A DNA stretch of 64,000 bases from positions 10,989,480-11,053,479 of the forward strand of contig CM121342.1 in NCBI GenBank assembly GCA_051530055.1, read 5' to 3'. The stretch comes from Neoechinorhynchus agilis. Lineage: Eukaryota; Animalia; Acanthocephala. Under the pieces are notes generated by a model that searched no databases, was not told the DNA's origin, and was given only the letters and a program-made list of their open reading frames with translations. A program made the position numbers and the translations under genes. Shown piece after piece: positions 897-55,570 of this stretch (its first letter is position 1; each line of letters starts with the position of its first letter).

Positions 897-1573
897 TTGT
901 AAAGATGTTCATCATTTACTTTTTTAATTGGCAAGGGTCAGGTCGATGTTCATCAGGGCATTTAGATTTTGTTCCGATGGAATGAGCCTCAAAGATGAGC
1001 TGAATTGGATTTGTAGTAGCAGTTTAAAAGGGAGTGGATATCCAAAGAGATACATTGAAAAATGTAAGAAGGCAGCGCAATATGTTCCATCGATTAAAAA
1101 AAGCTATCAGCACGAAAAGAAGCACTTCATTAAGGCACAATTCATCAGTGGTCCATTGAACTCAAAAATGGAAGCTGTAATCAAAAAGATTGATATAACA
1201 AGAAGGGCAAGACTCTACAAACAGTATTTCGGCCGAAGAATGATTATGGTATTGCTGGATGTGTTTACAAGATCCCATGCTGCAACTGCAATCTAGCTCT
1301 TATGTGGGACAAACGAGCAATCTAAAAAGAAGGATTGCTGAGCACCTAAAAGCAACTTTTAGAAAGACTGAGTTTAGCAATAGTGTCCCATATTATGAGC
1401 AACGGGCACAATGTTAATTTTGATATTGTTCAGATTCGTGCGCGGGGTGGACAATGGAGACCATCATGATGCAAAAACGGTTACGTTTGTGGATTTTAGA
1501 TAGACTGAAGAAGGCCTACGCGAAGGCCGAAAATTATCAAATCAATTATTTGATAATTCGCTATAAACTAGTA
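897..1573 (+). mobile_element. 5'-truncated, decayed Penelope-like element (RT thumb/linker + GIY-YIG + 3' hammerhead)
   Basis: ORF 928-1296 (SGYPKRYI, KAQFIS) is followed by frameshifted GCVYKIPCCNC / SYVGQTSNLKRRIAEH. Hammerhead at 1501-1540. A 12-bp direct repeat AATTACTGGATT at 885-896 and 1574-1585 is a TSD candidate. Confidence 0.8.
1501..1540 (+). ncRNA. Minimal type I hammerhead ribozyme motif
   Basis: taga CTGAAGA a GGCC tacgcgaa GGCC GAAA AT T A tcaa: core boxes intact, 4-bp stem II, palindromic stem III AATT, stem I has one mismatch. Confidence 0.7.
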
Positions 1574-1705
1574 AATTACTGGATTGTTCAATTAAGAGGG
1601 ATCTTAATCGCTCGTCATTACCCACATCAGAGTACAAAGTGTCATCATAAACAAGGAAGAATGACTTTATTTTTGTGTTCTCACAGCTAACATCGGTTCA
1701 TTCGA

Positions 1706-2140
1706 ATGCTCCATCGATTGTCGGGTCACCTAATCAAGTTAGTGAGATTTTCAAGTAGGAGGGAACTTTCACTCGAGATTGACTCATCGGTTTTGAAGGT
1801 AATCTTTCATATTTTGATTTTCAATGAACGTCTTTTGTGTTTTCAGAGACTTCAGGAAATTAACGAAAGGAGTTTGAGAGTTGAACTTGTCGGTGGAGGC
1901 TGTTCCGGTCTTCAAGTTTGTTTCTCACTCGATTCGAACCTTTCGGGCGCTACTGACCAGACGTTTGAGCTTGATTCAAGCGGTCACCGAGTAATTGTCG
2001 ATATAGAAAGTCTGAAGGAGCTTAACGGTGCAAGACTCGAATACCAAGACGATCTTATAAAGTCAGGATTTCGCGTAGTTCATAACAAAAAGAAGCAAAC
2101 ATGTTCATGCGGATCTTCGTTTGTACCTTTAGGCGATTAG
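1706..2140 (+). CDS. ISCA2: Iron-sulfur cluster assembly protein 2 (A-type carrier), mitochondrial; in-frame 48-nt intron 1799-1846
   Basis: GGGCSGLQ and TCSCGSSF motifs; SLKELNGARLEYQDDLIKSGFRV; Arg/Ser-rich N-terminus; GTAATC...TTTTCAG intron. Confidence 0.9.
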   Translation: MLHRLSGHLIKLVRFSSRRELSLEIDSSVLKVIFHILIFNERLLCFQRLQEINERSLRVELVGGGCSGLQVCFSLDSNLSGATDQTFELDSSGHRVIVDIESLKELNGARLEYQDDLIKSGFRVVHNKKKQTCSCGSSFVPLGD

Positions 2141-2493
2141 CCACGAACAAGAGGCAACTGATCGAAGTTACCGAAGCTGCATCCAATGAACTCCATCGTC
2201 TACTTAGTCAACGGAACAGTTCGCCTTCGGCTGGGATGCGTTTGAGCCTTAAAAGACACGGGTGCTCAGGTGTAAGTTTTGAATTGAGTTACGCTTCCGG
2301 CAACACGAAACGTGATGAACTCGTTGAAGTTGCGAACGGTATCCGTTTATACATTGACCCAATGGCCATTATGAACGTGGCAGGCACTAGGATGGATTTT
2401 GTACACGATAAACTAGAACGGAAGTTCACTTTCAGCAACCCAAACGCTTCCCGAACTTGTGGATGCGGAGAAAGCTTTAAATTTGAAAAATGA
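2101..2493 (+). CDS. ISCA1: Iron-sulfur cluster assembly protein 1, mitochondrial; overlaps ISCA2 by 40 nt in another frame
   Basis: VTEAA, HGCSGVSF, GTRMDFVHDKL, FTFSNPN, TCGCGESF motifs; presequence-like MFMRIFVCTFRRLAT. Confidence 0.9.
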   Translation: MFMRIFVCTFRRLATNKRQLIEVTEAASNELHRLLSQRNSSPSAGMRLSLKRHGCSGVSFELSYASGNTKRDELVEVANGIRLYIDPMAIMNVAGTRMDFVHDKLERKFTFSNPNASRTCGCGESFKFEK

Positions 2494-2670: not shown

Positions 2671-4431
2671 TTAAATTTTTAGTTTATCGAAGAAAAGGTC
2701 GTTTCCATAGACTGAAGTCGTTCCTGAATTACACACAGGAACGCGTTCAAACACGCGTTCCGGTCGGTTTTGGAAATACAAGAACACACTGGTCCCTTTA
2801 CCATGAGTAGAAACGACCTTTATATCTCCACCGAGGTACCTAATGTACAGTCTTGACACAGGCAGTCCAAATCCGCCGCTCAACATTCCTAGAGTTGTCG
2901 ATCGGTGCGTTATTGGATGACGTTTGGTTGAATACGAATATCGGAACACTTGATCCAGTTCTCGAATTGGCATGCCAATACCCCGGTCAGATAAGTCTGG
3001 TGGGGCTCTCGTCTTCATGGAGTTCGTAATGATATCGACTAGAATATCCACTAATCTAAAAGTAATCGCCGTATCGGACCTATCTAATTATCCTTATAAA
3101 AAGAAATTAGCTTTTATATGGGACAAAACAATTTTTCAGTTGCACACATAAGTGAAGCTGTATGAGAAAGCTCTTTAATCTCTCAAAATTGAGATTGGGT
3201 TCGGTCATAAATTTTGAGATCGGATAGTACGGATGAAAAGACCAGGTTTAAAAATCAATGCTATTCGAATACCTCCAGTCTGTGGAAATTGAGACGAGAG
3301 TCATCAGCGTATGACGACCGTTAGATCATTTCGAGCAGGAATTACGTCCATACGGATTCGGAGTCGGGTGCCAAATTTAAGAATATCGCTTTCGACGAAC
3401 GACCTGGTTTCCTTTGGTGGAAATAACTGCATCTTTACAACGGCTTCCATCGCATTGGCCAAACATTCAGAAAATATTCTGTCTAAATGTTGATTTACAT
3501 ACGGAATTCGGACACTTTTAAGGTCCGTCTCGCTTGTACCACGTCCCAACCGCGGTTCAATAATCCTCACGTCAATCCTTAAAGATCGCAATATCATTTC
3601 CCTAGCACTAGGATCAATTTTTTCAGTAATGACGCTTTCAGACTCGGCTTTGCTTATCAATAAAGACTTTGTGTTCTCGAACGCCCGTTGAGCACTTTCT
3701 ATCACATCGTAATTAGCAGTCATTATAGGCAATATGCGGACTTTAACCCCCTGACTGCGATGAAGGAAATCATCGGGACCATGTTGGGTTTGTTGCGATT
3801 TGGAATAGAACGTACTCAAGAACATTTGAATCGGCAAGCGCATACTGATTCTTATTCCTAAGAATCTATCAGTGAAATATTGCATACAATTATCTTTGCC
3901 TTTATTATAGGGTTCGTCAGTACCAGCTCGAAGTTCACTGTAAGTGTCGCTCAGTGAATGGATTACATTTGCGTGTCGATTAATGAGCGTCTGAAGTGTT
4001 TCTGCAAACGACTCGACGACCATTCGTTTCCGTTCATCAGGAGAATAATCACTAAGTCCATGGACTTCATATTTAAGCAAGTCGCACATTGTCTGATCGT
4101 AGAGGCTTTTTATGTCCTTGAACCCTTTTGTACGTTTAAGAAAAGCTGGAACTACACTCATTTCTTTGATCATGTTAGACATTCTGACTGGTAGTTCACA
4201 TCGTAGGTGGTTGTATAAAGTTACCAAGTCCTTTTCTCGAGAAAATTCAAGCATATTGGCAATGGACATCGGTGTAGGGTTGAAGTTTGCATATTCGTTT
4301 AGTTTGTGTTCATATTCGACCGTTGCTGGAGATGGAGATGAAAATGTCAGTAGTGACCTAGATGCATGGACGTTCACTTTGAAAGAGCGAAATAATCTTC
4401 CACAATGAGCCGTAAAATACAATGCGGCCAT
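2671..4431 (-). CDS. PDK: Pyruvate dehydrogenase kinase (PDK/BCKDK family); proposed intron 3353-2997
   Basis: NPTPMSI..MLEF, ELPVRMSNM, FTDRF...RISMR, N-box ECLANAMEA, SDRGIG, YSYST, GGFGLPVSRLYIRYLGGD, GKGT. The canonical join GTATGG...CCACCAG gives RLRIHLSDRG. Confidence 0.88.
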
Positions 4432-6801: not shown

Positions 6802-9166
6802 TCATTGTAGTCCTCGTCGCAGAGTCTCCATTTCCTTCCCTACAAGTTTAATTTTAATGGTACTTTGTCTTAGAGCTTCTTCGTCCTCATTTGCTTTCAC
6901 TTGATCCGTCTCAAACTCCCGTAATAACTGTTCAAGACCATCGAGATGTTCCTTAAGAGCTTGCTGACCGCCTGTCTTCAATCGAGCAACGATTTTATCT
7001 CGTTTCAATGACAACGTCTTCATTTCTCGTTGAAAATCTATTCGTCGGTTCGGATCTTGGACCATTTGAAGCGACCGTTCCAATTGAGCACTAGCATAGT
7101 TGATCAACTGCAGGCTTGAAGGTCTAACTACAATGTGAGGTGTATCAAGAACAAGCCATCTATGGAGTTGAGTGCTCTGAACACATAGTGGGTACCGGAG
7201 TCTCAAACTCACGTCTATCGTTGTAACGGTCTTGCGCCGAAGTAACATAGACAACGCTGAACACCGATATTGGGCACTGTTTTCGAGATTGGAGAGGGCA
7301 AGGGAAGCTGAGGCGTCAATGCGTTCGCTAAGGTTAAGGAAACCGTACCGGCTTATAAGCTCAAAAAGAATGTCTTTCCTTCGAGAAGACCGTCTACTTG
7401 GTCTGTAATCACCACGATCTATACTGAAAGTTAATTCAAAATCTGAATCGTCCATGATTTTCTGCCGAATAACTTGTGGTTTGTCCTTAGGAAACGGATA
7501 TGTTACCAAGGCTGGAGTTTGGAAAGAGAATTATTTAATAAAATTGACCCCTGTTGGGTATAGTACGGTATTATAAAAACCTTATACAAAAATGAACGCT
7601 TTCGGTCTTTAAATGTAGCTCCATCTACAGCCTCGAAAAAAAGTCCAAACGTCCAGCCATTTCTACTCGAATCATTTTCCCTATGGCATCAGCATTTACA
7701 GCGATTTTAATGATCAGACTATTGATATGGACATCAGCATCGTTCGCAATTTCCCGATCTTCATAGTGAAACCTGATCTTGTCATCTAAACTGCACATTT
7801 TGGCACTTTTGAACTTCGCTAATTCTCGCTTAGCATCTTCGAGCATTCTTGGATCATTGGTGCTCAAAGATGCGAGTTTAAGCTGTTGTTCAAGTTGAGA
7901 TTGGATCCCTTGTATTAATGTTGATGAATTAGCTAGAACCGAAGCGCCATCCTCGGTCCTGAGAGACGTGCTTCTCTTCAATTCAACCATATATTTTTTA
8001 GCTTCATCCATTTGACCACGGCGTTTCGCATCAATCGCCAAGCTTTTTAGTTTTTCAATGGATGTATTGGGTGATGTTTGAGTGATTGATGGAACAATGA
8101 ACGAAGCTGACTTCTTCGCAGGTCCTAGTGGTCTAAGAGATTTCAATGCTGCTTGCGTGGATGGTGGTGATGAAAGTGTAGAAGACGGTTTTGTCTGTTT
8201 AGGAGCAATCGGAAGAGGGCCAACGCCTATCTCGAAAATTAATATAAATATTTGAAAGCAATGGCGCTTACCAATCGCTTCAGGCAGACTTCCATAATTA
8301 AACGGTTTATTGTTCTTAAACGCTTCAATTGCCTGTTCGTATTGCTGTTTTGTGTACGTTTTAGAAAACACAAATATTGGTTATTGTTTTGAAGTACGCC
8401 ACAAACCTTTAAAACTCGTTGAAGACGCCTTTGTTTGCATCGATCTTCTCCACATGAAGCTAATTGCTTTTGAAAGGAAGCGTAAGACTCGCTTAATTTA
8501 GACAAAAGTAGTGACGAATTCCCTTTCGGTTCTTCGATTTTCTTAGTTTCCTCGACAGGTCTAACAGCACATACCGAAGGCAGAGGAGGAAGGGAATTCA
8601 AATCGACTTGATGACCAGACAGAACTTGCTTCTCTAAGTGTTCGATCGCGTTCAACTGCCGACCAAGTCTCTTTAGTCTCATTTGATCAGTTGTACATTC
8701 CGATATTGCTTTCTTATAAACATCCAGACGATCTCTAATCACTTTAAGATTAGTTTCATCGACCTCCACTTTAATATCATGTTCACATTCAACTCCTTTT
8801 ACGCCCTCGAGCGCATTTAGTTCGGCTATACCAGCGGTTCCCAGTTTTTTAAAGTTTCAAAAAGAATAAACGAAAATCCCGCATAATTGAGAACCGTTGA
8901 AACAAAAGATCCTCATCGTTCTCGTCCACGTCTGAAATATCGTCATCTTGTTTCAAATGCTCATTGACCAGTTTTTGTGGATCGATCACGATATGATCGT
9001 TGGAATCCGGCGTTTTTCGTCGTTGCACATTTTTAATAAGGTCTTCGGAATTTTGACCTTCAAGAGCGAGAAGCTCCCTCTCGAGTTCAGCTTCATCCAC
9101 GTCCCAAGTCGTGCCATGAGCAGATCCTGACAAAAGAGACTGCATTTGCGAGCAGAGGTCATCCAT
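6802..9166 (-). CDS. CC2D1: CC2D1/Lethal giant discs-like protein (DM14 repeats + C2 domain), about 5 exons
   Basis: DEAELERELLAL N-terminus; DM14-like RLDVYKKA...VDLNSLPPLP and QYEQAI...NYGSLP; C2 with TYPFP, FELI..GF, LRLRYPL, RWLVLD; canonical introns resolvable (e.g. AAG|GTTTGT..ACAG, G|GTAAGC..ATAG). Start codon tentative. Confidence 0.8.
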
Positions 9167-9887
9167 TTCTTTTGGAACATTCCCAAAAGCAGGAAACAAC
9201 TTAATGAATTTAGAAATGCGCCAAGGTTTCGCAGAGAGAGACAAGACTTACCGAAGAATTCTGTGGATCGCGGTTTTGAGACCGAGAATTCTTAAACGGA
9301 TCAGCAAGTTCCCTTTTGGAAGTCATCTTCAATGTGACACAAAAAAAATTAGCGCGAGAACCACAAGCAATCTAATCAAATATTATTTGGTTCAATCAAG
9401 ACGTTTTGAACAATGACACGCGATTAAATGCGGTATTCGGCTAAGACGACGACGATTTCAAGCCTTATTCTTAAGCCAAAAGTTTGTAAACACGCTATAA
9501 GACAGAAAGACTCTTGATTTTCAAGAATGTTTTGCGGCCATCGTCGTAAATCGGCTTAATAGATTAATTCAATCAAGTTTCATTGTGTCGTATTTGGCAC
9601 GGCATTCGCAGCGTGAATCTTAAACCGCACTCGGGAAGACGTCCAGCGGTAGGGGGGACGCTACCGGCGTTATGTTCACGACCTCGACCGGCACCGAGAT
9701 GGGTCGTGATTAATTGTAAGAGAAAAAGTTAATTTATTGAGAATAATTTCTAACTAAAGTTAAGAATATGATGAGGTTGATTTAATTGTAATTTATATTC
9801 GCTGTAACTTTTAAATATTTCGTAGCATGGTTTAGTTTTGACGTTAAAAAATCTCGAAATTTTAACAATTTTTTCCATCACAAAGCT

Positions 9888-10130: not shown

Positions 10131-10159
10131 AAATTGGAGCATAAAAATTATTTTCAATT

Positions 10160-12955
10160 GAACATAGTTTCGTTTTCTTCAAATGTTATGTTTGTTCGGC
10201 AGCTTCCTTGATGGCCGCGGCATTGCCGCGTTGGATCGCCGCGCTGATTCGCTGCAACAGGAAGCTGCTGGATCGCATATCGCCGGAGACATCCCAGCGT
10301 GTCCACCGCAATCGGGATGAAAATATATTGATGCCCATCGAGCGAGGAGTAATTCTGCCGCTTCTTTTCCTCGCTGAAGCTGGTGACTGCTCCCGCCTTT
10401 GAGGTGGCATCCCGTAACTGGGATGCTGCGAGCGTGTTGGGGCAGGTAAAATCCCAAACCAGTATTTTCCCGGAGCACCATGGGAGGAGATTCGCTCCAT
10501 CAGGGCGTTTACCGTCGTTCCGGGAGAGTCCAACTGGTTCGAGTCGAGCTGGAAAACCGGCCGTTGAGAGTGCTTCCCTGATTATGCGGTTGACTGCTGA
10601 TTGCCGTGCGTGGCGAGCAGTTGAACGCTTGCAGTCAAGGCCGTGAGTTCCTGATCCGTTCACTGTCTCACCGCACCGACATGTATATGAGCCTGAGAAT
10701 TCGATGCCCAACCGATGTCCCACAGCGACGGTGATGGCCTGATCATCCAGCCTCGTGCCAACAGATGTGATTGGGAAAGCCTTCAAGAACGAGCTCTATC
10801 GTTGGGAGATGAGCATGAGTTAAGAAGCTGCTGATAACACGCAGTGTGGAGCAAGGCAGTCCAACGTTTTTGGGAGTTTATTTCCGTTGGAACGACCTGC
10901 CGGAACACTGACGTCCATTGAGCGTGCGCTTCGATCAGTTCAGGCGGTGGATGTGACTCGTGTCGAATGTGTGGTGGGATGATTCTCAGCACCAGGTCTG
11001 AAGAAACCGAGATCGACGACGAAAAGGCAGGAATTGCTACTTCGGTGGCACTCTGGATGCCAAGACCGCCGAATCGAATAGGAAGGATCGCCTGTTTCCA
11101 TGCTGTGTCGGACAGACGTAGGTTAAGTACTTCTGACAGGGTTGATCGAACGCAGTTGTCGAAATCCCTGGTGAGCACTGACTTGAAGCATGGAGAAGTC
11201 CTCAGAAGGTACGCAATCTTCGGTAGCGACAGACATCGTGATAATATGAACAGAGCGTCGTGCCGCGCTATGTGCAAGAGCCTGGAGGCAATGAGCCGCA
11301 ATTGATCGATGGCTTTTGAAAGGAACGTTTCCAGGTTAGAAAGGTTACCGATTGGAGACCCGAGAATGTCAGCTGGGTCGGTCGCAGTTGTCTTTTCTCC
11401 GGGCAGTACGGTGAGCAGTCTCGATGCATCCTCTTGGTCGTCCGAAATGATTTCGCATTTGTCCGTTCTCAGGAATAGTCCGATATCGGCATCCATTTCG
11501 GAGATGTTTTTGATGTCGCGAGTGAGCTGGTCGATCTCCCCTCCGATGCAACAGTCGTCGAGGTACCAGATCGATAACTCTGACGAAGAGCTGTGGGCAA
11601 GATGATTGATCTTCAATGCGAACAGCAGAGGACCTAGAGGATCATCTTGTTGAACGCCGTCTGCTGATTTGACCTGGAACTCGCTAAGCAGCAGCATGCT
11701 GGACTGGTCGTAGCACAAGGACACATACAGGTAGATTTCTGGTATGTGCTGGTGGACAACCTCTGTCATCGCGGTGCGGCATATTGAATTGAACGCGTTC
11801 TCCATGTCAAGCTTGACCATAGCCGTTCCCTTATTGATACCATTTCGACTATACGCTCGTGCTGCATGCACGGCTGCCTCGGCTCCAGCAGGAACTGCGA
11901 CTCCTAATTGAACTGGCAAGAGTTGATCAATAAATCGATCGGTGGCGAACTGACACGCGACTTTGGATGCCAGTCGACGGAAGGTACAACCAACGGCAAT
12001 GGGACGAGCCCCTCCACCTTTTTTTGTGAAAGCGATCAGCTTGGCACCGCAGAGTAGACGAGCGACTGGAGGAGGTACGGAACCGCGGACGATTACGCGT
12101 GTGAGCTCGGTGATTGCGTTGAGCAATCGTGTACCTTGAGCTCCAGAAGAGAAGCAGGTCAAATCCCGTAAGTGTCGAGGACTCAAACCATCATGCCCTC
12201 CAGCTGACGATGGCGGAAAGGACATCAGAGCGTAAGTGACGGTGGAGACTGTAATGAGTATGAGGGGATCGCGATCGGACTATGTGAACGACGAATCATA
12301 ATTTGGCTTGAAGCAACTCCGTCTGCGTGGAGGATGCTTCAATTTTAAGGAGTCGAGGATGTCCTTGTTTGGCGCGAATAGGCGGTCCGTTCCGCTTACA
12401 AGTCGAACGGCACCCCTCAGGTCGCCGTCCTCCAGCTTCTCGGAGCATTTCGCACGTAGTTGAGAGTCCGGGTCGTGAGGAAAATTACGGCGATGGCTCT
12501 GCCATCCAAGATGCTCGACTTGTTCAAAAAACTCGAAAGCGTCGGACCTGTTGCGAATCTTTTGACTGAGCGATTGATTCTCGTTGGCTTCAGCAGTTTG
12601 TGTTGGAAAACGTAAGACGGCTTTGGGAAACGCGAGGAGGTTGAACCAGTCAGATGGTACGGTTGGATCTCGTATGATACGCTCGATCAGGCATGCTAAT
12701 TTGGAAGCTAAGAAGGACCTGGCGCCTCGCGGGATTCGTCTAATCATGCTGGTACCGTGTGAAAGCATCTCGATCAGTGCATCGGTGGGGCATTCGTGTC
12801 TGTGACCACAGTTGTGAGTTCGGTTAAATTGGATGGATTGGATGAAGACGGAGAAGCAGGCTGAGTTGGAGGTTTTCTGGATCCAGGGCAATGCGAACCA
12901 TGCTGACCGTGGGAGCGGACGAGACCACGTTGTTGCGGCGGACGTTGTTGCGGCG
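10160..12955 (-). mobile_element. CRE-clade non-LTR retrotransposon (RT + zinc knuckle + restriction-like endonuclease), 5'-truncated and frameshifted
   Basis: RRIPRGAR, KHPP, GLSPRHL, RPIAVGCTFRRL, DMENAFNS, GVQQDDPLGP, WYLDD, CRCG..GTHGLDC, RPDG, WDFT, QRGNA. Confidence 0.92.
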
Positions 12956-12993
12956 TATTTCGTCCAATCACACTGGACTTCTTCAGTCAATTA
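12956..12993 (-). ncRNA. Truncated hammerhead motif abutting the 5' end of the CRE element
   Basis: aattga CTGAAGA a GTCCA gtgtgat TGGAC GAAA TA, then CRE sequence; the UH site and the 3' strand of stem I are missing. Confidence 0.6.
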
Positions 12994-18113: not shown

Positions 18114-20324
18114 TCATTCTTCAACTTCAGGAAAGGACTTCGAATGTCGTAAAGATGGCGGTCTCACTACATGATGAGAGGGCAAAGCTGTAGAACTATG
18201 ATTTCGAGTCCACGATCGCGTAAGTAACCGCTTTACCTTCCTATGTTCGGGCGCAAGGAACATGACATCAAGAACCTGATATTTTTGTTCTCGGACCAGC
18301 TTTCGATTTTTTCCAAAGGACAAAACGACTATATCGCAAACCAAAGTCGCCAATCCGAGAATCCCAACGATTGAACCAATATTCATACTAAACGCAATAA
18401 TATCAAACTTACCAGCAGCTCCATTTACATTGACAACTAAACGAATTCCATAGGCTTTGGTAAGCAACCTTTGTTCTTGGGCGCCAAGCTTCCAATAATC
18501 TGAATATCTGAAATTATAGCCCGCTGAAAATCGTTCAACGTAAAATGGTGCATCAATACGCCGGAATTCATAATTGGGCACACAACGGTGAATGGCCAAA
18601 TCGAGATTGCAATTCCATTGAATCTTGAGACGAATCGCGCATCCATATTTAAGCATCAGTTGCAGTTCAGTTTTGTTTTTTTCAACAGCTTCAAGGATTC
18701 GTCCCACTTTGAAGATAGGGCAAAGTGGATCAGTGACTTCATGGTGAATGCAACTTCTAAAATATCGAGGTGATAGTTCTGGAACGAAGTTTTTCCGGAT
18801 AACACCAAACGCGGGGAATTCAATATAGTTTTTAACGAGGATCGTCAAATTCGGTATATGTCGAAAAGATTGAGGAATATGAATGTCATTTTCAATCGGA
18901 CACCATCCACGAACTTGACACACTTTTTCAAGTTTCTTGCCTGCAAACATTCTATCTGCAAAAACACACTTCCCCGTGACCTTACCGTTCTGTTTTGGAC
19001 GAAACGAAGATGGGACGCAGTCGGAATCATTTTTACATAAACTGAAACTCAAATCAGGATCCTCAGGACAATAGCCGCGCTTTTGCTGGGTTAAAATTCG
19101 GTTAGTCATGATGAATATGGCATTGTCTTCATGTGATGGTATCCGGAGCCAAAGAGTTGTCGACCAAAGGGAAAGATAGATTCTACGAAGTATTACAATT
19201 AACTAACAAAAACGTTCACCTCTTAGAAAAACCATTCGGCAACTTAGATTTTTAGATCTTGTAATACAGTTGTTCATTTATATATGTGTGTGTATTTTGT
19301 TTGGTGATGAGAAGAATAGCGATTAATTTATTAATTCTCAATATTTCGTCCGTTTCGTCCAACTTCTGAAACGGACAAAATATTGAGAATTAATAAAACA
19401 GTCTCTATTTTTATAATCACCAAAGAACACACATATATATAGATCTTAGGAAATTACAATCAAACATGGTCCAGTATTTTTTCACGTCGACATTTAAGTA
19501 AGAACCTTTATATTAACTTCAAAATAAACTCTAAATTTCGATTTCTAGAAACTGGTAATTTCCCTTTTAGTTATACATAAAAAATTGTTCGTACTCAAAT
19601 TCAATTATACAGTCCAAAAGGGCGATTTATTCAAGTCACTGTGTCGAAATATTAAAGTCATCGTGTCTGTAAAATAGATGCGCGTTTATTGCCATCTAAT
19701 AAAAAAACGATTACTAAAAATTTCGTTGTTTTCGCGTACAAAGTTATCTTTAATTTTTACAAATTTATATAAAACAATAACAACCTGATTGAGTTGGGCA
19801 TTATTTTGTTGTGTTTAGCGCCCATTGGATGTACAAAAATCCCTACAAATTTTGTACTTCCTATAAGACGAAAAGCATGATTCAAAATTAAATTATGGCT
19901 GCATTTTTAAAAAGCTTTGTCTGTCGTCTATTTGATTATCTTAAATTGATAGCGTGAGATTTGTTGCGAATGACGAAGTAAACACCAAGAATCGATTACT
20001 CGATGGATCCGAAGTTATCACATATTCGGCAGCGTCCAAAACAACATCATTATGTTTGATCCGATGGAGAACAGCTCCCTTTGTCTTTATGGTTGTAGCG
20101 CTTATAATGGACCGGTCCACCCGTTGGTATCCTTTCATATGAACCATGATATATAAGATACAATAGACGAGAATGAGGCACTGAATGGTCCTGCAGAGTA
20201 TAGCAAGTCCAGCACTGTTGATTGTAACAACTTTCGGCGTTTCGTATTGAATAAAGGCTGTTCTGAGAATGCTTTTCAAGCTTCTCGTGAACCTTGTGCC
20301 TTTTTTGTTTGTGGTCGCTTGCAT
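18114..20324 (-). CDS. P2RX: P2X purinergic receptor; proposed intron 19999-19127
   Basis: YETPKV, KGYQ, TIKTKG, GYCPE, CQVRGWCPIE, DPLCPIF, WNCNLD, GYNFRY, KAYGIR, GAAGKFDI; two TM helices; ATP-binding K/NFR/K residues present. Confidence 0.92.
19279..19440. repeat. Foldback element inside the P2X intron
   Basis: TTTATTAATTCTCAATATTTCGTCCGTTTC / GAAACGGACAAAATATTGAGAATTAATAAA, plus outer TATATATGTGTG / CACACATATATA. Confidence 0.8.
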
Positions 20325-28149: not shown

Positions 28150-31100
28150 ACGTTACTTCATTTATTTCATTATCAACACACAACTCCCAATTGAATCCAA
28201 TTTTCCAAAAATCACCACAGTCCGCCAAATTCCAGCTTCTCTCCTCCCTCGACCGTCGCCATCACGCTGGCAGCATTGCCTCGTTGTACTGTCAGCGAGA
28301 TATTTTGTCGCAGGAATACACCTGTTCGTGCATCACCGGTCGTTTCTCTCAATTTCTTCGAGATCCTGGAGCAGAGTGAGTGCCGAGCTGCCAAGCGCTC
28401 CATACATCTCTAGTCCGAAGGGGACAAAATAGTGGGCCCTTGCTAAATCCCTATATTTTCGTAACTTCCTCTCTTCCGCTGCACTGGCGGCACCACCGGC
28501 GATTTCGGGGGAGTAGCGAATGTTGCTGGCTGCGAGGGTGTCCACACGCGTTGCGTCCCAGAGAAGGCATTTGCCCTCCCGCCACGGAAAGACCGAAATT
28601 CCGTTAGGTCGACGACCGTCTAGTCGACAAAGATGGGCGGGTTCCAAGATGTTCCGGAAGTTCACCGTTCCCAACGCCCGAGATATTACGGTATTGATCT
28701 CAGAATGGCGTGAGAACCTTCCTCCTGACGATCGGCAAACGAGACGGCATCGCCAGAAAGCATCAACCATAAACCCACATCCGGGAGACCAAGCTTTAAG
28801 AACACTGCGATCCTCGTTAGCTCATCAGTGAAAAGAGTTTCCACAGATGCCATGTCGATACTGCCAATAATATAGCTCGGACGACCTCATCGCGAGAACC
28901 TGAAAGTAGAGAGCTGTGAGCTCTCGCGACGAAAGGTCTGTCCCAGATCGACTGTCTGAGGCCATCCACGGGAACATGGTTAGCGCCTGTCTACTGGCAC
29001 AATTCTGCAACTGCCACCACAGTCTTGGTAAAGACAAAACTTTTCCCTCAGAATTTTCTTCACTATTGGTTGACTCCCCCATACGATCCAAGTATGGCTG
29101 GCAAGGCAAGGTCTACTAGCACCCGAATGCCCACTACCCCAGATGACACATGCAATGAAGCTTGTCGCCACGCCTCATCTGAGAGCTGGACATTGAAAAT
29201 ACGCTCGAGACAAGCCCTCACCTTGTCGTCAAGCTTAGCCAATCCTTCCTTATGTTTGAAGAATGTTGCTGTGCGGACCCTATATAACAATTTGGGGATA
29301 AAGAGTGCGTTCTTGATCAGAAATAACACGTCGTGAACCGAGAGAGCGCTTACCCTATTGCACAGCAACTTTCGATATGATACGGCCGATCTCAGCTTCC
29401 ATATTTGAATCAAAGACGCAACTAGCCAGGTGGCTGAGCTGCCCGGGAGTCACGAGTTTCAGACCTGGAGCTACGGCCTCGAACCCATCCATTAGCTCCT
29501 TGACTTTGGCGGCTTATTCGATATTTAATACTAGGAGCTCACACCTTCCAGCATTGAGCTCAATGTTCATTCTTGAGATCTCCCTAATCAGCGTCTCCAA
29601 ATCGCGCAGTACAGCGGAGGGATCACCTCCGAGCGTAGCGTCATCCAAGTACCAAGCGTTGAAGCTGGAATGGAGAGAGTGCGCTACTGGATTTACTGTT
29701 AGGGAGAATGCGATTGGACCGAGAGGATCTCCATGCTGCACTCCTCTTTGGGACCAAATGAGGTGGTCTTCGAAAGCAAAGGAGTCGCGGTCCCGTAGGC
29801 ATTGAGAAGATACTAAAAGGCTTCTGGTGCGTGATCCCTAATTGCGCAAAACATACTTTCTCTATTGAGGGAGTTAAAGGCATTCTGAAAATCGCACTTA
29901 AGAATCACGCACGGCTCTGAACTCCTCGTCGTAAACTTTCGCAGCGCGTGGACAATAGCTTTCGCCCCGCAGGATGTGCAGCAGCCCAGTTGGACTGGGC
30001 GAAATTGCTGCCCGCTTTTATCTGTGATACGTTTACAGAGAATTTTCCTGCAAGTCCGCGACGAATCCCACCTTCTTTTTTGTGAGGCACATAATGATGC
30101 TCCGAAAAATAGGTTTTTTGTAACGGGATTCAGGTCCTCTCGAGTCAGGCGGTCGACTAACCGAGAAAGCGCACTTTCTAGAGAGCTGCTTCACCAGTTG
30201 TAAAGGACATCATGTCCTTTAAGTGCTGAGGCCTTAGCCCGTCAAGCCCATGACCCGAGCAATTTGCAAAAGATGAGGTAGCCTTTTTTAACTCTGAAAT
30301 TGGAGTGGGTGTCCTGTGTTGTATCGGAGGAGGTGGAATTTCAAAACTGCCACTACTGCATGGGTTTTTTGACCGGAGTATTTGTAGTGTCGCGTTGTCT
30401 CCTTGTGCAAAACTGTCGGAGGATGACAAGAACCGAACAGCCCCCCCCCGAACATCTCCGTCCGCAAGCTTCGAAGAGACACGTTCAGTCAGGGATCACT
30501 TTGAAAAACGGCAACGAAACCCTTCCTTCATACGTCCCTTACGAACCTCGCGGAGATTCCTTTCAAAATCATTAAATATTTGTTCAAAGGAGGCTAACCT
30601 TTCCTTGATTGTTGATGCCAAAGACACCCCAGAATCATCACTGGCGCAAAGGACTAAGCGCGGGAATGCGAAGTCGTGTCCATGATGGCGTACAGTTATT
30701 TTGGAGGCAATCGTTGAGCAATCCCGTAAATGCGATATCGTGCGCCCTTTGGGATTCGTTTCAGGACGTTCCTGGGCAGAACCCGCACGATATCAGGTAT
30801 CGAAATAGGGTCAGTGGTGATCTGAGAGATCCCAGCCATAAACAGATCGGTTAATTGTGGTGGAGAACCAGACTTACTACAGCGGAGATCCCGGGGACAA
30901 TGGACAGACAAAACCCCCAGATTGGTTAATTTAAAAGACCTACCGCAAACCGGACACACACCAGTAGAGACGCATGGGAGCCCGGCAGCATTGGTCTTCT
31001 CAGGTTGATCATGATCGATGAGTGGCGCGTTCAAGGTGTCTACGTCAGTAGCGTCGATTGTAGGCGATATGAACGCAGTTCGCGATACGTCTTATTTGGT

Positions 31101-40049: not shown

Positions 40050-40720
40050 TTGAAGCACACTCACCACCTCCCGCCAAATTCCAGCTTCTCTCCTCCCTCG
40101 ACCGTCGCCATCACGCTGGCAGCATTGCCTCGTTGTACTGCCAGCGAGATATTTTGTCGAAGGAATACACCTGCTCTTGAGTCTCCGGTTGCCTTTCTCA
40201 ATTGCCCTCCCGCCACGGGAAGACCGAAATTCCATCGGGCCTACTGCCGTCTAGTCGACAAAGGTGGGCGGGTTCCAGGATGTTCGGGAAGTTCACCGTT
40301 CTCAATGCCCGAGAAATTACGCCGTTGATCTCAGAATGGCGTGAGAACCTTCCTCCTGACTTTCGGCAAACGAGACCGTGTCGCCCGGAAGCATCAACCA
40401 AAGACCCACATCGACAGCGATGGGGCGTGCATATCGGGAGACCAAGTCTTAAGGATACTGCGATCCTCGTTACCTCATCAGCAAGAAGAGTTCCCACAGA
40501 TGCCAGAGGAACAGACTCTAACCACGCCCCAGATTCTCGTGTTGAAACTGCAAACAGTCTTGCTCGGACGACCCCATCGCGAGAACCGGAAAGTAGAGAG
40601 CTGTGAGCTCTCGCGATGTCTGAGGCCATTCACGGGAACATGGTTAGCGCCTGTCTGCTGGCACCATTCCTCAACCGCCACCATAGAAACCACTTTGTAA
40701 AATCGAATCGTAATTGTCGG
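40050..40720 (-). mobile_element. CRE-clade 3' fragment with an internal deletion; close relative of 28150-31150
   Basis: GAWLESVPLASVG, CRCG..GRHGLVC, RPDG, QRGNAASVMATVEGGEKLEFGG. Confidence 0.9.
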
Positions 40721-41322: not shown

Positions 41323-41405
41323 TTTACAATCCCGGTGGATTTTCTCGATATGATTAGTATTGGATATATTCAGTGGTAAAGAAATTAGGACTTCTTTCCC
41401 TGTAG

Positions 41406-54240: not shown

Positions 54241-54639
54241 TTTTTGTTTTTGTCAGTTGTTTGACTCCAAAAAGACATGACTGTCTTTTACTAAAGTTTT
54301 ATGAATCATTTCATATGAATGCGTACATTTTGACTTATACGTTGTGGTTTTATAGCTAGTTTTCTAAAAACAATTAAAATTATTACCATTGTTTGAAAAA
54401 TCGAATCCATTGTTGATTATTAGATTTGCCATTTCATCGGCATTACCGTTCTGTGCGGTACCGTAGCTCAGTTTCTTAAATCAAGTTATTTTGAAAAAAA
54501 CAAGTCTGGTTTCGGTGAATTTAGCAAGAAAAATATATGATGCTTTTAACCTTGAAAAATATATGAACAATCAATATATCACGGGAAAATCCTTTCTCCA
54601 AAAGAGTACCAGTATCACAATGAATGCTTACAACTGAAT

Positions 54640-55570
54640 CGAGAAAATACTTCCAATCTATTTCATCAAGCTGCATCGAAATGCTTATTTTTTGGGCTAG
54701 GAACGAAGTCGATCTTGGCTCTCCAGTCGCCGCGTTGATTCGTTTTCCCAAGTCCTTCAGGAGGGCTAGTGCCGACCCTCCCAAGGCCCCATACGTTTCC
54801 ACGCCGAAGGGGACAAAATAGTAGTTTCGGATTAGCTTCCTGTATTTCGAGCATTTCCACTTCTTTGCCGCCGTCGCCGCTCCTCCTGGACCTTTTTTCG
54901 AGTGGCTGATGTTGGAGTTTGCCAACGTGTCCACACACGTTGCATCCCACAACAAACATTTTCCCTCCCGCCAAGGAAATACGGTCACGCCATCAGGGCG
55001 TCTTCCACCTAATATACAAAAATGAGTGGGTTCTAGAATGTTTGGGAGGGAAAGCGTTTTTAGAGTCCTACTCAGAGTGGCATTGATTTCAGCATGCCTT
55101 GGAAATCGTCCCGCTGACGTCTTGCATATGAGACCGTGTCTCCCTGAAGAGTCCACTGTAGTGCCGCAGCTGCAGCGATGCGGGATGCAAATCGGTAGGC
55201 CTCTAATCTCAAGGATACTGTGATCCTGACGACTGAGTCAGCAAGGAGAGTTCCAAGTTTTTCTACAGGGAGAGCATTCAGCCACGCTCCCGACTCCTTC
55301 ATGGAACAGGCTACCAGCCGCACCTGCGACACCTCACCCAGAAGATCTTTGAAAGAGTTGTGAATCTTCTGAACAAGAGGAATGTCCTAAGACGACTGTT
55401 TGCATTCATTTGCGGGGAGCTGGTTGATGCCTGTTAATTGATGCCATTGAGATAATCCTGTTTCAAAGATCGCATCCTTCAGTGATGTGCCTAAAATGGC
55501 ATCGACATAGACTTTACTTGCCCGGCAAGAGGAGAGGAATGCGGCCAGCATTTTGACCAGCACCGATGAA
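54640..55570 (-). mobile_element. CRE-clade fragment (thumb to endonuclease)
   Basis: SGAWLNALP, GRHGLIC, RRPDG, WDATCVDT, FVPFGVETYG. Confidence 0.9.

What the first reader, a model, noticed from the sequence alone, without database searches (positions are those of the whole stretch)
1706..2493. ISCA2 and ISCA1 overlap on the same strand: the ISCA1 presequence is overprinted on the ISCA2 CxC motif
Seen: the ISCA2 stop is at 2138-2140 and the ISCA1 ATGs are at 2101 and 2107 in the -1 frame. The same 40 nt read T-C-S-C-G-S-S-F-V-P-L-G-D-stop and M-F-M-R-I-F-V-C-T-F-R-R-L-A; the second is Arg-rich, acid-free and presequence-like. The next ISCA1 Met lies inside the conserved domain, so initiation must be in the overlap unless splicing supplies another N-terminus. 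Established: ISCA1 and ISCA2 are ancient paralogs that form the heterodimer building mitochondrial [4Fe-4S] clusters; same-strand overlapping CDSs are rare in animals. Inference: a two-subunit operon-like unit, resolved by reinitiation on a bicistronic mRNA, by SL trans-splicing at TTTCGCGTAG (2069-2078), by an internal promoter, or by splicing donor 1799 to the weak AG at 2150-2151, which would put the ISCA2 targeting exon in frame with ISCA1.
Basis: partly seen in the sequence, partly recalled or inferred. Interest (0 to 1): 0.82.

Follow-up and report, generated by a model that had tools for sequence, protein, structure and literature searches.

The report
Overlapping ISCA2–ISCA1 two-gene unit
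In thorny-headed worms, the genes for the partner proteins ISCA2 and ISCA1 (which together build mitochondrial iron-sulfur clusters) lie head to tail and overlap by 30-40 bases in different reading frames; two distant species share this layout, and public annotations wrongly merge the pair into one fusion protein.

Summary
The window comes from Neoechinorhynchus agilis (Acanthocephala). An ISCA2 ORF (1706-2140, with a 48-nt intron) and an ISCA1 ORF (2101-2493) overlap by 40 nt in different frames. The ISCA1 start codons lie inside the codons of ISCA2's C-S-C-G cluster-binding motif.

The same layout occurs in Pomphorhynchus laevis, from a different acanthocephalan class. There the ATG also sits in tcATGcgg of the CSCG codons, the frame offset is the same, and the overlap is 28 nt. 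This rules out an assembly indel. Both public annotations bridge the frame change with different, weak-donor "introns" that delete the CxC motif. I judge these to be gene-finder artefacts.

In both species the spliced ISCA2 message has no ATG in any frame between the ISCA2 start and the ISCA1 start (344 and 377 nt). ISCA1 and neighbouring genes carry about 2.3-2.6 ATGs per 100 nt. Both ISCA2 start codons have weak context.

My best reading is a dicistronic gene of the MOCS2 type, translated by leaky scanning. No transcript data could be reached, so the mechanism is inferred. Rivals are a splice-generated fusion as in MOCS1, and a separate ISCA1 mRNA. It is a new member of a known but rare kind.

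The parts
1706..1798 (+). ISCA2 exon 1: presequence-like N-terminus plus the first strand of the fold (MLHRLSGHLIKLVRFSSRRELSLEIDSSVLK). The start codon has weak context (cgaATGc: C at -3, C at +4).
   Evidence: The intron position (after ...K|RL.EI) is shared with P. laevis.
1799..1846 (+). ISCA2 intron, 48 nt, GTAATC...TTTTCAG, in frame and stop-free. It holds the only ATG (1824) between 1706 and 2101.
   Evidence: Its removal restores the conserved ...SSVLKRLQEINE... seen in homologues.
1847..2140 (+). ISCA2 exon 2, through GGGCSG and CSCGSSF to stop TAG 2138-2140.
2101..2493 (+). ISCA1 coding sequence (130 aa from ATG 2101, 128 aa from ATG 2107). ATG 2107 (tcATGcgg) is the start shared with P. 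laevis.
2101..2140 (+). Dual-coding overlap: the ISCA2 C-terminus (TCSCGSSFVPLGD*) and the ISCA1 presequence (MFMRIFVCTFRRLA).
   Evidence: Across the two species, codon identity is 5/7 here against 17/56 in the rest of ISCA2.
1709..2100 (+). ATG-free tract of the spliced ISCA2 message: 344 nt after intron removal, with no ATG in any frame.
2062..2132 (+). The 71-nt 'intron' of the public BRAKER model ACOME3_007211 (GTCAGG...CCTTTAG). It fuses ISCA2 lacking its C-terminus to ISCA1. It is probably a gene-finder artefact, possibly a minor alternative splice.
1661..1690 (+). Possible 9-codon upstream ORF (MTLFLCSHS*) ending 16 nt before the ISCA2 AUG. It overlaps a strong 3'-splice-site-like motif (TTTGTGTTCTCACAG, 1672-1686). 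Whether it is part of the mRNA is unknown.

Best explanation
This is one transcription unit carrying two overlapping cistrons, ISCA2 then ISCA1, inherited from the common ancestor of at least two acanthocephalan classes. ISCA2 is translated from the first AUG (1706). That AUG has poor context, so some scanning 40S subunits pass it. No AUG exists in any frame in the rest of the spliced ISCA2 ORF, so those subunits reach the ISCA1 AUG(s) at 2101/2107, inside the ISCA2 C-S-C-G codons. They then make ISCA1 with its own short basic presequence. Both partners of the mitochondrial [4Fe-4S]-building pair therefore come from one mRNA in a ratio set by leaky scanning, as human MOCS2 makes MOCS2A and MOCS2B. 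What is shown: the overlap, its conservation, the ATG-free tract and the weak AUG contexts. What is inferred: a single mature mRNA, leaky scanning, mitochondrial import of both products and their heterodimer function.
For: (1) The geometry was verified. (2) An exhaustive search of 1.84 billion representative proteins with the public fused model found one other ISCA2-ISCA1 two-domain protein among the 150 best hits listed, P. laevis GJ496_009298. Its DNA (L006) shows the ISCA2 last exon ending ...SCSCGSSFFVN* (stop 11672-11674). An ISCA1-frame ORF starts at ATG 11647 within tcATGcgg, with the same frame offset and a 28-nt overlap. The two species are only 49% (ISCA2) and 40-42% (ISCA1) identical, and their flanking genes differ (PDK-like against MCM8). 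(3) There are no internal ATGs between the two starts: N. agilis 344 nt and P. laevis 377 nt. ATG density in eight other coding ORFs of the window is 2.33 per 100 nt, which predicts about 9 (Poisson P about 1e-4). ISCA1 itself carries 10 and 15 ATGs. An unlinked ISCA2 homologue (L002) has 6 ATGs in 441 nt. ATG-free gaps this long are about 0.2% of gaps in the window, and the P. laevis gap exceeds the longest in L006. With the protein sequence fixed and background codon usage, 2.3 and 1.8 out-of-frame ATGs are expected, with P(0) = 0.037 and 0.073. (4) Both ISCA2 AUGs have a pyrimidine at -3 and no G at +4. (5) The ISCA1 N-termini from the overlap ATG are basic and acid-poor: +5 and no acidic residue in the first 19 aa in N. 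agilis. In P. laevis, the 57 codons between the ISCA2 stop and the ISCA1 domain are open only in the ISCA1 frame. GC over the whole 201-nt N-terminal stretch (11647-11847) is exon-like, 0.43 against 0.24 in the intron. The chance of an open frame is 0.006-0.012 on intron composition. (6) Synonymous sites in the overlap are more conserved than elsewhere in ISCA2 (5/7 against 17/56 identical codons, one-sided Fisher P = 0.045). (7) MOCS2 is a precedent: 77 nt are dual-coding for the essential C-terminal motif of one subunit and the N-terminus of the other, translated by leaky scanning (PMC9607355; PMC3923131).
Against: No transcript, 5'-end or ribosome data could be reached. No N. agilis transcript contigs are in the searchable collections. 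The transcription start is unknown, and both species have a short uORF just upstream of the ISCA2 AUG that might or might not be in the mRNA. Much of the ATG depletion lies at the amino-acid level: ISCA2 proteins generally lack Met, and within-gene codon permutation gives only P = 0.26 and 0.09. The conserved ISCA1 AUG itself has weak context (T or C at -3). The ATG is partly forced by the Ser-Cys codons, so its conservation alone is weak evidence. Both annotation pipelines found GT-AG introns that fuse the ORFs, and the N. agilis annotation run used RNA-seq. I could not see whether junction reads support that intron.
Confidence: 0.5

Rival explanations
1. Fusion by alternative splicing, as in MOCS1. 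The unspliced message yields full ISCA2. A minor or major splice (2062-2132 in N. agilis, 11641-11690 in P. laevis) removes the ISCA2 CxC motif and stop codon and joins the ISCA2 body, with its targeting sequence, in frame to ISCA1. The fusion is imported and perhaps cleaved to release ISCA1.
For: Both public gene models are exactly of this form and reproduce P0001 and P0123. The N. agilis acceptor is strong (TCGTTTGTACCTTTAG, 11 of 14 pyrimidines). BRAKER was run with RNA-seq hints. Human MOCS1 uses this trick, deleting the essential C-terminal motif of the first protein (PMC9607355).
Against: The two 'introns' are not homologous in position: 21 codons before CSC in one species, directly at CSC in the other. 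Both have atypical donors (GTCAGG, GTGCTC). The six introns reconstructed with some support in the two loci begin GTA; the three ISCA2 introns of P. laevis and the one of N. agilis are homology-supported, and two more are the unique fit to BRAKER model lengths. The one other reconstructed BRAKER intron, in the PDK-like gene, begins GTTCGT, but that model is itself doubtful. The deleted segment is a well-conserved, intact ISCA2 C-terminus carrying two of the three cluster ligands. A gene finder that cannot output overlapping same-strand genes must invent such an intron. This model does not predict an ATG-free ISCA2 ORF. In N. agilis the fusion would cut the ISCA2 fold mid-domain.
Confidence: 0.15
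2. Separate ISCA1 mRNA. Either an internal promoter or spliced-leader trans-splicing within the ISCA2 exon gives ISCA1 its own capped message, so the overlap is between transcription units (an operon-like pair resolved at the RNA level).
For: Spliced-leader trans-splicing and operons are known in bdelloid rotifers, relatives of acanthocephalans, and in chaetognaths. Some genes in the window have strong 3'-splice-site-like motifs just before the ATG, for example PPIL1 and ISCA2 itself. AG dinucleotides exist shortly upstream of the ISCA1 ATG in both species.
Against: No paper in the library reports trans-splicing in Acanthocephala. Rfam finds no SL RNA in the window. The candidate acceptor at 2069-2078 is weak and not conserved. 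The best acceptor-like score upstream of the ISCA1 ATG is ordinary, since 66% of random positions score as well. In N. agilis a promoter would have to sit inside a 294-nt coding exon. This model does not explain ATG depletion over the whole ISCA2 ORF.
Confidence: 0.2
3. Coupled termination-reinitiation. Ribosomes finishing ISCA2 at 2138-2140 move back 31-37 nt and restart at the ISCA1 AUG.
For: The stop lies shortly downstream of the restart codon in both species (28-40 nt). Such coupling exists in some viral and human mRNAs (PMC3923131).
Against: I saw no UGGGA-type 18S-complementary motif when reading the overlap and its upstream flank. There is no unusual RNA structure around the overlap in either species (z-scores from +0.7 to -0.6). 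From my own knowledge, the distances are long for known eukaryotic cases. This model does not predict ATG depletion upstream.
Confidence: 0.05
4. A programmed -1 frameshift, or an assembly indel, makes one ISCA2-ISCA1 fusion polypeptide that retains the CxC motif.
For: The ISCA1 frame is -1 relative to ISCA2. P. laevis has a near-slippery G-UUU-UUC in the overlap (my reading).
Against: N. agilis has no slippery heptamer at the homologous place, and no stimulatory structure is predicted. For the indel idea, two independent assemblies share the offset, and the N. agilis assembly is MaSuRCA-based with Illumina accuracy. ISCA2 ends at the family's normal C-terminus, and ISCA1 has its own ATG and presequence.
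Confidence: 0.04

Closest known systems
Human MOCS2 (molybdopterin synthase small and large subunits)
   Same: Two partner subunits are encoded by overlapping same-strand ORFs in different frames on one message. The overlap (77 nt there, 28-40 nt here) encodes the essential C-terminal motif of the first protein and the N-terminus of the second. The second ORF is reached by leaky scanning (PMC9607355, PMC3923131).
   Different: The pathway differs (Fe-S carriers, not Moco). The two products here are ancient paralogues of one fold. Both need mitochondrial presequences. Leaky scanning is only inferred here from sequence. The scanned distance is longer, about 390 nt.
Human MOCS1 (MOCS1A/MOCS1B)
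   Same: It is a bicistronic locus in which an alternative splice deletes the first protein's C-terminal functional motif and stop codon and fuses it to the second domain. The upstream part helps mitochondrial import. This matches the form of the public fused models of the acanthocephalan locus.
   Different: The MOCS1 ORFs do not need a start codon in the overlap. Here the bridging introns have poor donors, differ in position between species, and are not verified by transcripts.
Spliced-leader-resolved operons (nematodes, tunicates, chaetognaths, bdelloid rotifers)
   Same: Functionally linked same-strand genes are transcribed together, and the lineage is close to rotifers, which trans-splice.
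   Different: Cistrons in such operons are normally separate, not overlapping in coding sequence. No spliced leader is known or found here, and there is no convincing acceptor before ISCA1.
Bacterial isc/suf operons containing IscA/SufA
   Same: A-type carriers are co-expressed with partners from a polycistronic message, and short start/stop overlaps are common.
   Different: Translation there is prokaryotic and coupled through Shine-Dalgarno sites. These are nuclear, intron-containing animal genes with mitochondrial presequences, orthologous to eukaryotic ISCA2 and ISCA1, not a recent bacterial transfer.

Membership tests
A-type Fe-S carrier (HesB/IscA, Pfam PF01521) | Profile match above the curated threshold | tested here: met
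   ISCA2 ORF 27.5 bits and ISCA1 ORF 56.3 bits against a cut-off of 26.3. PDB relatives are IscA, SufA and related A-type (HesB-family) carriers.
A-type Fe-S carrier (HesB/IscA, Pfam PF01521) | Three conserved cysteines: C-x(n)-C-x-C | tested here: met
   ISCA2 has GGGC49SG and C116-S-C118. ISCA1 has HGC55SG and C120-G-C122. The same holds in P. laevis.
Eukaryotic ISCA2 orthologue (upstream ORF) | Closer to ISCA2 than to ISCA1, with the GGGCSG.Q and CSCGSSF signatures | tested here: met
   44% identity to human ISCA2 against 26% to ISCA1, and 45% to P0121 (the human sequences were recalled from memory).
Eukaryotic ISCA1 orthologue (downstream ORF) | Closer to ISCA1 than to ISCA2, with the F.F.NPN...CGCGESF signature | tested here: met
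   37% identity to human ISCA1 against 29% to ISCA2. Among the ten top database hits whose names were looked up, those that carry a name are eukaryotic ISCA1-type proteins, for example 'IscA-like 1, mitochondrial'.
MOCS2-type overlapping dicistronic gene read by leaky scanning | Two same-strand ORFs overlapping in different frames, with the second start inside the first ORF | tested here: met
   conserved in P. laevis
MOCS2-type overlapping dicistronic gene read by leaky scanning | No AUG in any frame between the first and second start codons of the mature mRNA | tested here: met
   0 in 344 nt (N. agilis) and 0 in 377 nt (P. laevis).
MOCS2-type overlapping dicistronic gene read by leaky scanning | Suboptimal context of the first AUG | tested here: met
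   C or T at -3 and C or A at +4. The species' own consensus is not established.
MOCS2-type overlapping dicistronic gene read by leaky scanning | One mature mRNA carries both ORFs, and both proteins are made from it | not testable with these tools
   No transcript or proteome data for either species are reachable.
SL trans-spliced operon | Spliced-leader RNA and trans-splicing present in the organism | not testable with these tools
   No SL family hit in the window and no literature for Acanthocephala. The rest of the genome and the reads could not be searched.
SL trans-spliced operon | Functional 3' splice acceptor shortly upstream of the downstream cistron's start | tested here: inconclusive
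   Only weak AG sites exist before ATG 2101, with a score matched by 66% of random positions. They are not conserved in P. laevis.

The most novel reading that the evidence does not exclude
Acanthocephalans have kept their only ISCA2 and ISCA1 genes welded into one overlapping dicistronic message since before the Eoacanthocephala-Palaeacanthocephala split. An ISCA2 ORF purged of AUGs, possibly tuned by a tiny uORF abutting the ISCA2 AUG, acts as a built-in device that fixes the ratio of the two heterodimer partners. This would be the first cellular Fe-S assembly example of a translationally coupled heteromer in animals, and a second natural case beside MOCS2.
Probability: 0.4. Interest if true: 0.65.

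Novelty: new member of a known kind. Interest (0 to 1): 0.55.

Why it matters
Overlapping same-strand dicistronic genes that encode two partners of one complex are very rare in animals, and MOCS2 is the textbook case. A second, independent instance conserved across a phylum-level parasite lineage with a tiny 46-Mb genome would do three things. It would show that leaky-scanning dicistrons can evolve to couple paralogous heterodimer subunits. It would offer a natural system for asking how ORF-wide AUG avoidance is maintained. It would also correct the public proteomes: both species currently list a fusion protein without the ISCA2 cluster ligands, so ISCA2 appears non-functional and ISCA1 appears absent as a separate protein in comparative gene-content studies of these reduced parasites.

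Tried and rejected
- **Transcript evidence.** Exact look-ups of the ISCA1 ORF and of the single-exon PPIL1 ORF returned only the NCBI genome, with no RNA-seq contigs. The supplement of the N. agilis paper has no ISCA entry.
- **Spliced leader.** An Rfam scan of the window gave no hits. Literature searches found nothing for Acanthocephala. A test for acceptor-like motifs upstream of 13 annotated starts gave a mean of 7.4 against 5.7 at random, which is too small a sample to conclude from.
- **Intron-length signal.** Donor/acceptor spacing in the window gave only a faint excess at 30-49 nt. Building a splice-site matrix was abandoned because too few verified introns were available.
- **RNA structure.** Folding around the overlap in both species gave z-scores from +0.7 to -0.6, so there is no IRES-like or frameshift-stimulating structure.
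- **Wider taxonomic reach.** An unlinked ISCA2 homologue (L002) has no ISCA1 downstream. The other two-stretch hits of the exhaustive search are internal duplications or insert-bearing ISCA1s, not ISCA2-ISCA1 pairs. The top ISCA1 hits are protists and plants, not rotifers. Whether Seisonidea or other rotifers share the layout could therefore not be tested.
- **Shared-targeting-exon splice (1799 to 2151).** Rejected as unlikely.
- **Assembly indel.** Rejected because the P. laevis assembly shows the same frame offset.

Full report
**Source and observation.**
The window is from chromosome CM121342.1 of Neoechinorhynchus agilis (Acanthocephala, assembly GCA_051530055.1). Window base 1706 corresponds to record position 10,991,185.
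- The ISCA2-type ORF starts at ATG 1706. It has a 48-nt in-frame intron at 1799-1846 (GTAATC...TTTTCAG). Removing that intron restores the conserved ...SSVLK|RLQEINE... sequence. The ORF ends at TAG 2138-2140.
- The ISCA1-type ORF starts at ATG 2101 (second ATG at 2107) in the frame shifted by -1 and ends at 2493.
- The ISCA1 frame is closed by TAA at 2083-2085, and the next in-frame Met lies inside the domain.
- The 40 shared bases encode TCSCGSSFVPLGD* and MFMRIFVCTFRRLA.
- Both ORFs match Pfam PF01521 above threshold, match solved IscA, SufA and related A-type carrier structures, and keep all three ligand cysteines.
- The paralogues are 33% identical over the 85 residues that align, so this is not a recent tandem duplication.

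**What the public annotation says.**
The only N. agilis protein in the 5.8-billion-protein collection that matches either ORF is ACOME3_007211 (P0001, 222 aa). It is a fusion. It removes the 48-nt intron and also a second, 71-nt "intron" at 2062-2132 (GTCAGG...CCTTTAG). This joins ...EYQDDLIK to RLATNKRQLIEV... and deletes SGFRVVHNKKKQTCSCGSSFVPLGD, which holds two of ISCA2's three cluster ligands. The genome was annotated with BRAKER2 using RNA-seq. Gene finders of this type generally do not emit two overlapping same-strand genes (my own knowledge).

**Conservation in a distant relative.**
I searched P0001 exhaustively against 1.84 billion representative proteins. Among the 150 best hits listed, exactly one other protein had an ISCA2 domain followed by an ISCA1 domain: P0123. 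This is GJ496_009298 of Pomphorhynchus laevis, a palaeacanthocephalan. In its genomic DNA (L006):
- ISCA2 has four exons, and one intron is at the same position as the N. agilis intron.
- Its last exon reads ...SASQSCSCGSSFFVN* with the stop at 11672-11674.
- The ISCA1-frame ORF opens at ATG 11647, inside tcATGcgg of the C-S-C-G codons. This is exactly homologous to window ATG 2107, with the same frame offset and a 28-nt overlap.
- The annotation again bridges the frames with a small GT-AG "intron" (11641-11690, GTGCTC...ACCAAG) that removes CSCGSSF.

The two species share only 49% (ISCA2) and 40-42% (ISCA1) protein identity, and their flanking genes differ. The overlap is therefore an old, maintained feature and not an assembly indel. 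The N. agilis assembly is in any case Illumina-based MaSuRCA.

**Is the ISCA1 N-terminus really coding from the overlap?**
- In P. laevis, the 57 codons between the ISCA2 stop and the ISCA1 domain are open only in the ISCA1 frame.
- GC over the whole 201-nt N-terminal stretch from the ATG to the domain (11647-11847) is exon-like, 0.43 against 0.24 in the adjacent intron.
- An open frame of that length is expected in 0.6-1.2% of intron-like sequence, and in 9% on the region's own composition.
- From the overlap ATG, both N-termini are basic and acid-poor: +5 and no acidic residue in the first 19 aa in N. agilis. The N. agilis sequence RRL|A fits the R-3 processing motif; this rests on my own knowledge and was not tested.
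- Internal Mets in P. laevis would give acidic N-termini or none at all.
- Across the two species, identical amino acids in the overlap use identical codons in 5 of 7 cases, against 17 of 56 elsewhere in ISCA2 (one-sided Fisher P = 0.045). This is modest support for dual-coding constraint.

**How ISCA1 is expressed.**
The most telling feature is that the spliced ISCA2 message has no ATG in any frame between its own start and the ISCA1 start, in both species: 344 nt in N. agilis and 377 nt in P. laevis.
- The only ATG in the N. agilis interval (1824) sits in the intron.
- Eight other coding ORFs in the window average 2.33 ATGs per 100 nt, which predicts about 9 (Poisson P about 1e-4).
- The downstream ISCA1 ORFs carry 10 and 15 ATGs.
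- An unlinked ISCA2 homologue carries 6 ATGs in 441 nt.
- ATG-free gaps this long are about 0.2% of all gaps in the window. The spliced P. laevis gap (380 nt) exceeds the longest in L006 (359 nt).
- With the protein fixed and codons drawn from background usage, 2.3 and 1.8 out-of-frame ATGs are expected, with P(0) = 0.037 and 0.073.
- The stricter within-gene codon permutation gives only P = 0.26 and 0.09. Part of the depletion therefore lies in amino-acid content.
- Both ISCA2 start codons have poor context, with a pyrimidine at -3 and no G at +4.

This is the signature expected if scanning ribosomes that bypass the first AUG must reach the ISCA1 AUG unhindered. It is the mechanism described for human MOCS2. 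There, 77 dual-coding bases encode the essential C-terminal motif of MOCS2A and the N-terminus of MOCS2B (PMC9607355, PMC3923131). I therefore favour a dicistronic mRNA read by leaky scanning (confidence 0.5). The existence of a real, conserved overlapping two-cistron unit is much more secure; my estimate is about 0.9.

**Rivals.**
- *Fusion by alternative splicing, as in MOCS1.* This is the form of both public models, and the N. agilis acceptor is strong. Against it: the two "introns" are not positionally homologous. Their donors (GTCAGG, GTGCTC) differ from the GTA... donors of the six introns reconstructed with some support in these loci; the seventh reconstructed intron, in the doubtful PDK-like model, begins GTTCGT. 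They delete an intact, conserved ligand motif. The model does not predict ATG depletion.
No spliced leader is documented for Acanthocephala. However, relatives (bdelloid rotifers, chaetognaths) do trans-splice, and a few genes here have striking acceptor-like motifs abutting their ATGs.
- *Termination-reinitiation and -1 frameshifting.* Neither is supported by conserved motifs or by RNA structure.
P. laevis offers no good equivalent.

**Novelty and limits.**
Full-text searches found no report of an ISCA1/ISCA2 dicistron. The kind, an overlapping dicistronic animal gene for two partner subunits, is known from MOCS2, so I class this as a new member of a known kind. It also amounts to a correction of two public proteomes. 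Everything about RNA and protein products is inferred. The decisive data exist publicly (PRJNA1223661 RNA-seq and the P. laevis transcriptome and proteome) but could not be queried with these tools.

Noticed in passing
window 1259-1417 (+), with broken frames from about 928 to 1450: Remnant of a GIY-YIG endonuclease domain (Pfam PF01541, E = 1.9e-5) interrupted by stops. It is probably a decayed Penelope-like or other GIY-YIG mobile element, about 300 nt upstream of ISCA2.
   Followed up: partly
window 10154-12990 (-); related ORFs at 28333-28770 (-), 40198-40629 (-), 54521-55156 (-): A non-LTR retrotransposon with a reverse transcriptase ORF (PF00078). Its GC is about 0.52 in a 0.36-0.40 background. 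Several further copies of its C-terminal ORF are scattered through the window.
   Followed up: partly
window 2671-4431 (-): A PDK/BCKDK-like kinase gene converges on ISCA1, with 177 nt between the stop codons. The 321-nt intron of the public model (window 3080-3400, GTTCGT...GATAG) removes a stretch (...RLRIRMDVIPARNDLTVVI) that looks like the conserved segment before the DRGGG motif. That gene model is therefore doubtful.
   Followed up: partly
window 1661-1690 (+); L006 3394-3408 (+): Both species have a tiny upstream ORF next to the ISCA2 AUG. In N. agilis it has 9 codons and ends 16 nt before the AUG. In P. laevis it has 4 codons and its stop overlaps the AUG. If transcribed, it could divert ribosomes past ISCA2 toward ISCA1. 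The transcription start is unknown, and chance is not excluded.
   Followed up: no
window 41391-41405 (+), 1672-1686 (+), about 4480 (-): Strong 3'-splice-site-like motifs lie directly upstream of start codons: CTTCTTTCCCTGTAG abuts the PPIL1 ATG, TTTGTGTTCTCACAG lies 19 nt before the ISCA2 ATG, and TCCTTTTTATAG lies before the PDK-like ATG. This may hint at 5'-UTR introns or spliced-leader trans-splicing in this acanthocephalan. With 13 genes it is not significant.
   Followed up: partly
window 6802-7455, 7625-8682, 8849-9326 (all -): Three same-strand annotated genes lie only 166-169 nt apart, one with a faint CC2D1A/B DM14 match. They may be a single gene split by the annotation, or a tight same-strand cluster.
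   Followed up: no
window 18114-19109 (-): A long single-exon ORF encodes most of a P2X ATP-gated channel (PF00864, E = 8.7e-85).
   Followed up: no
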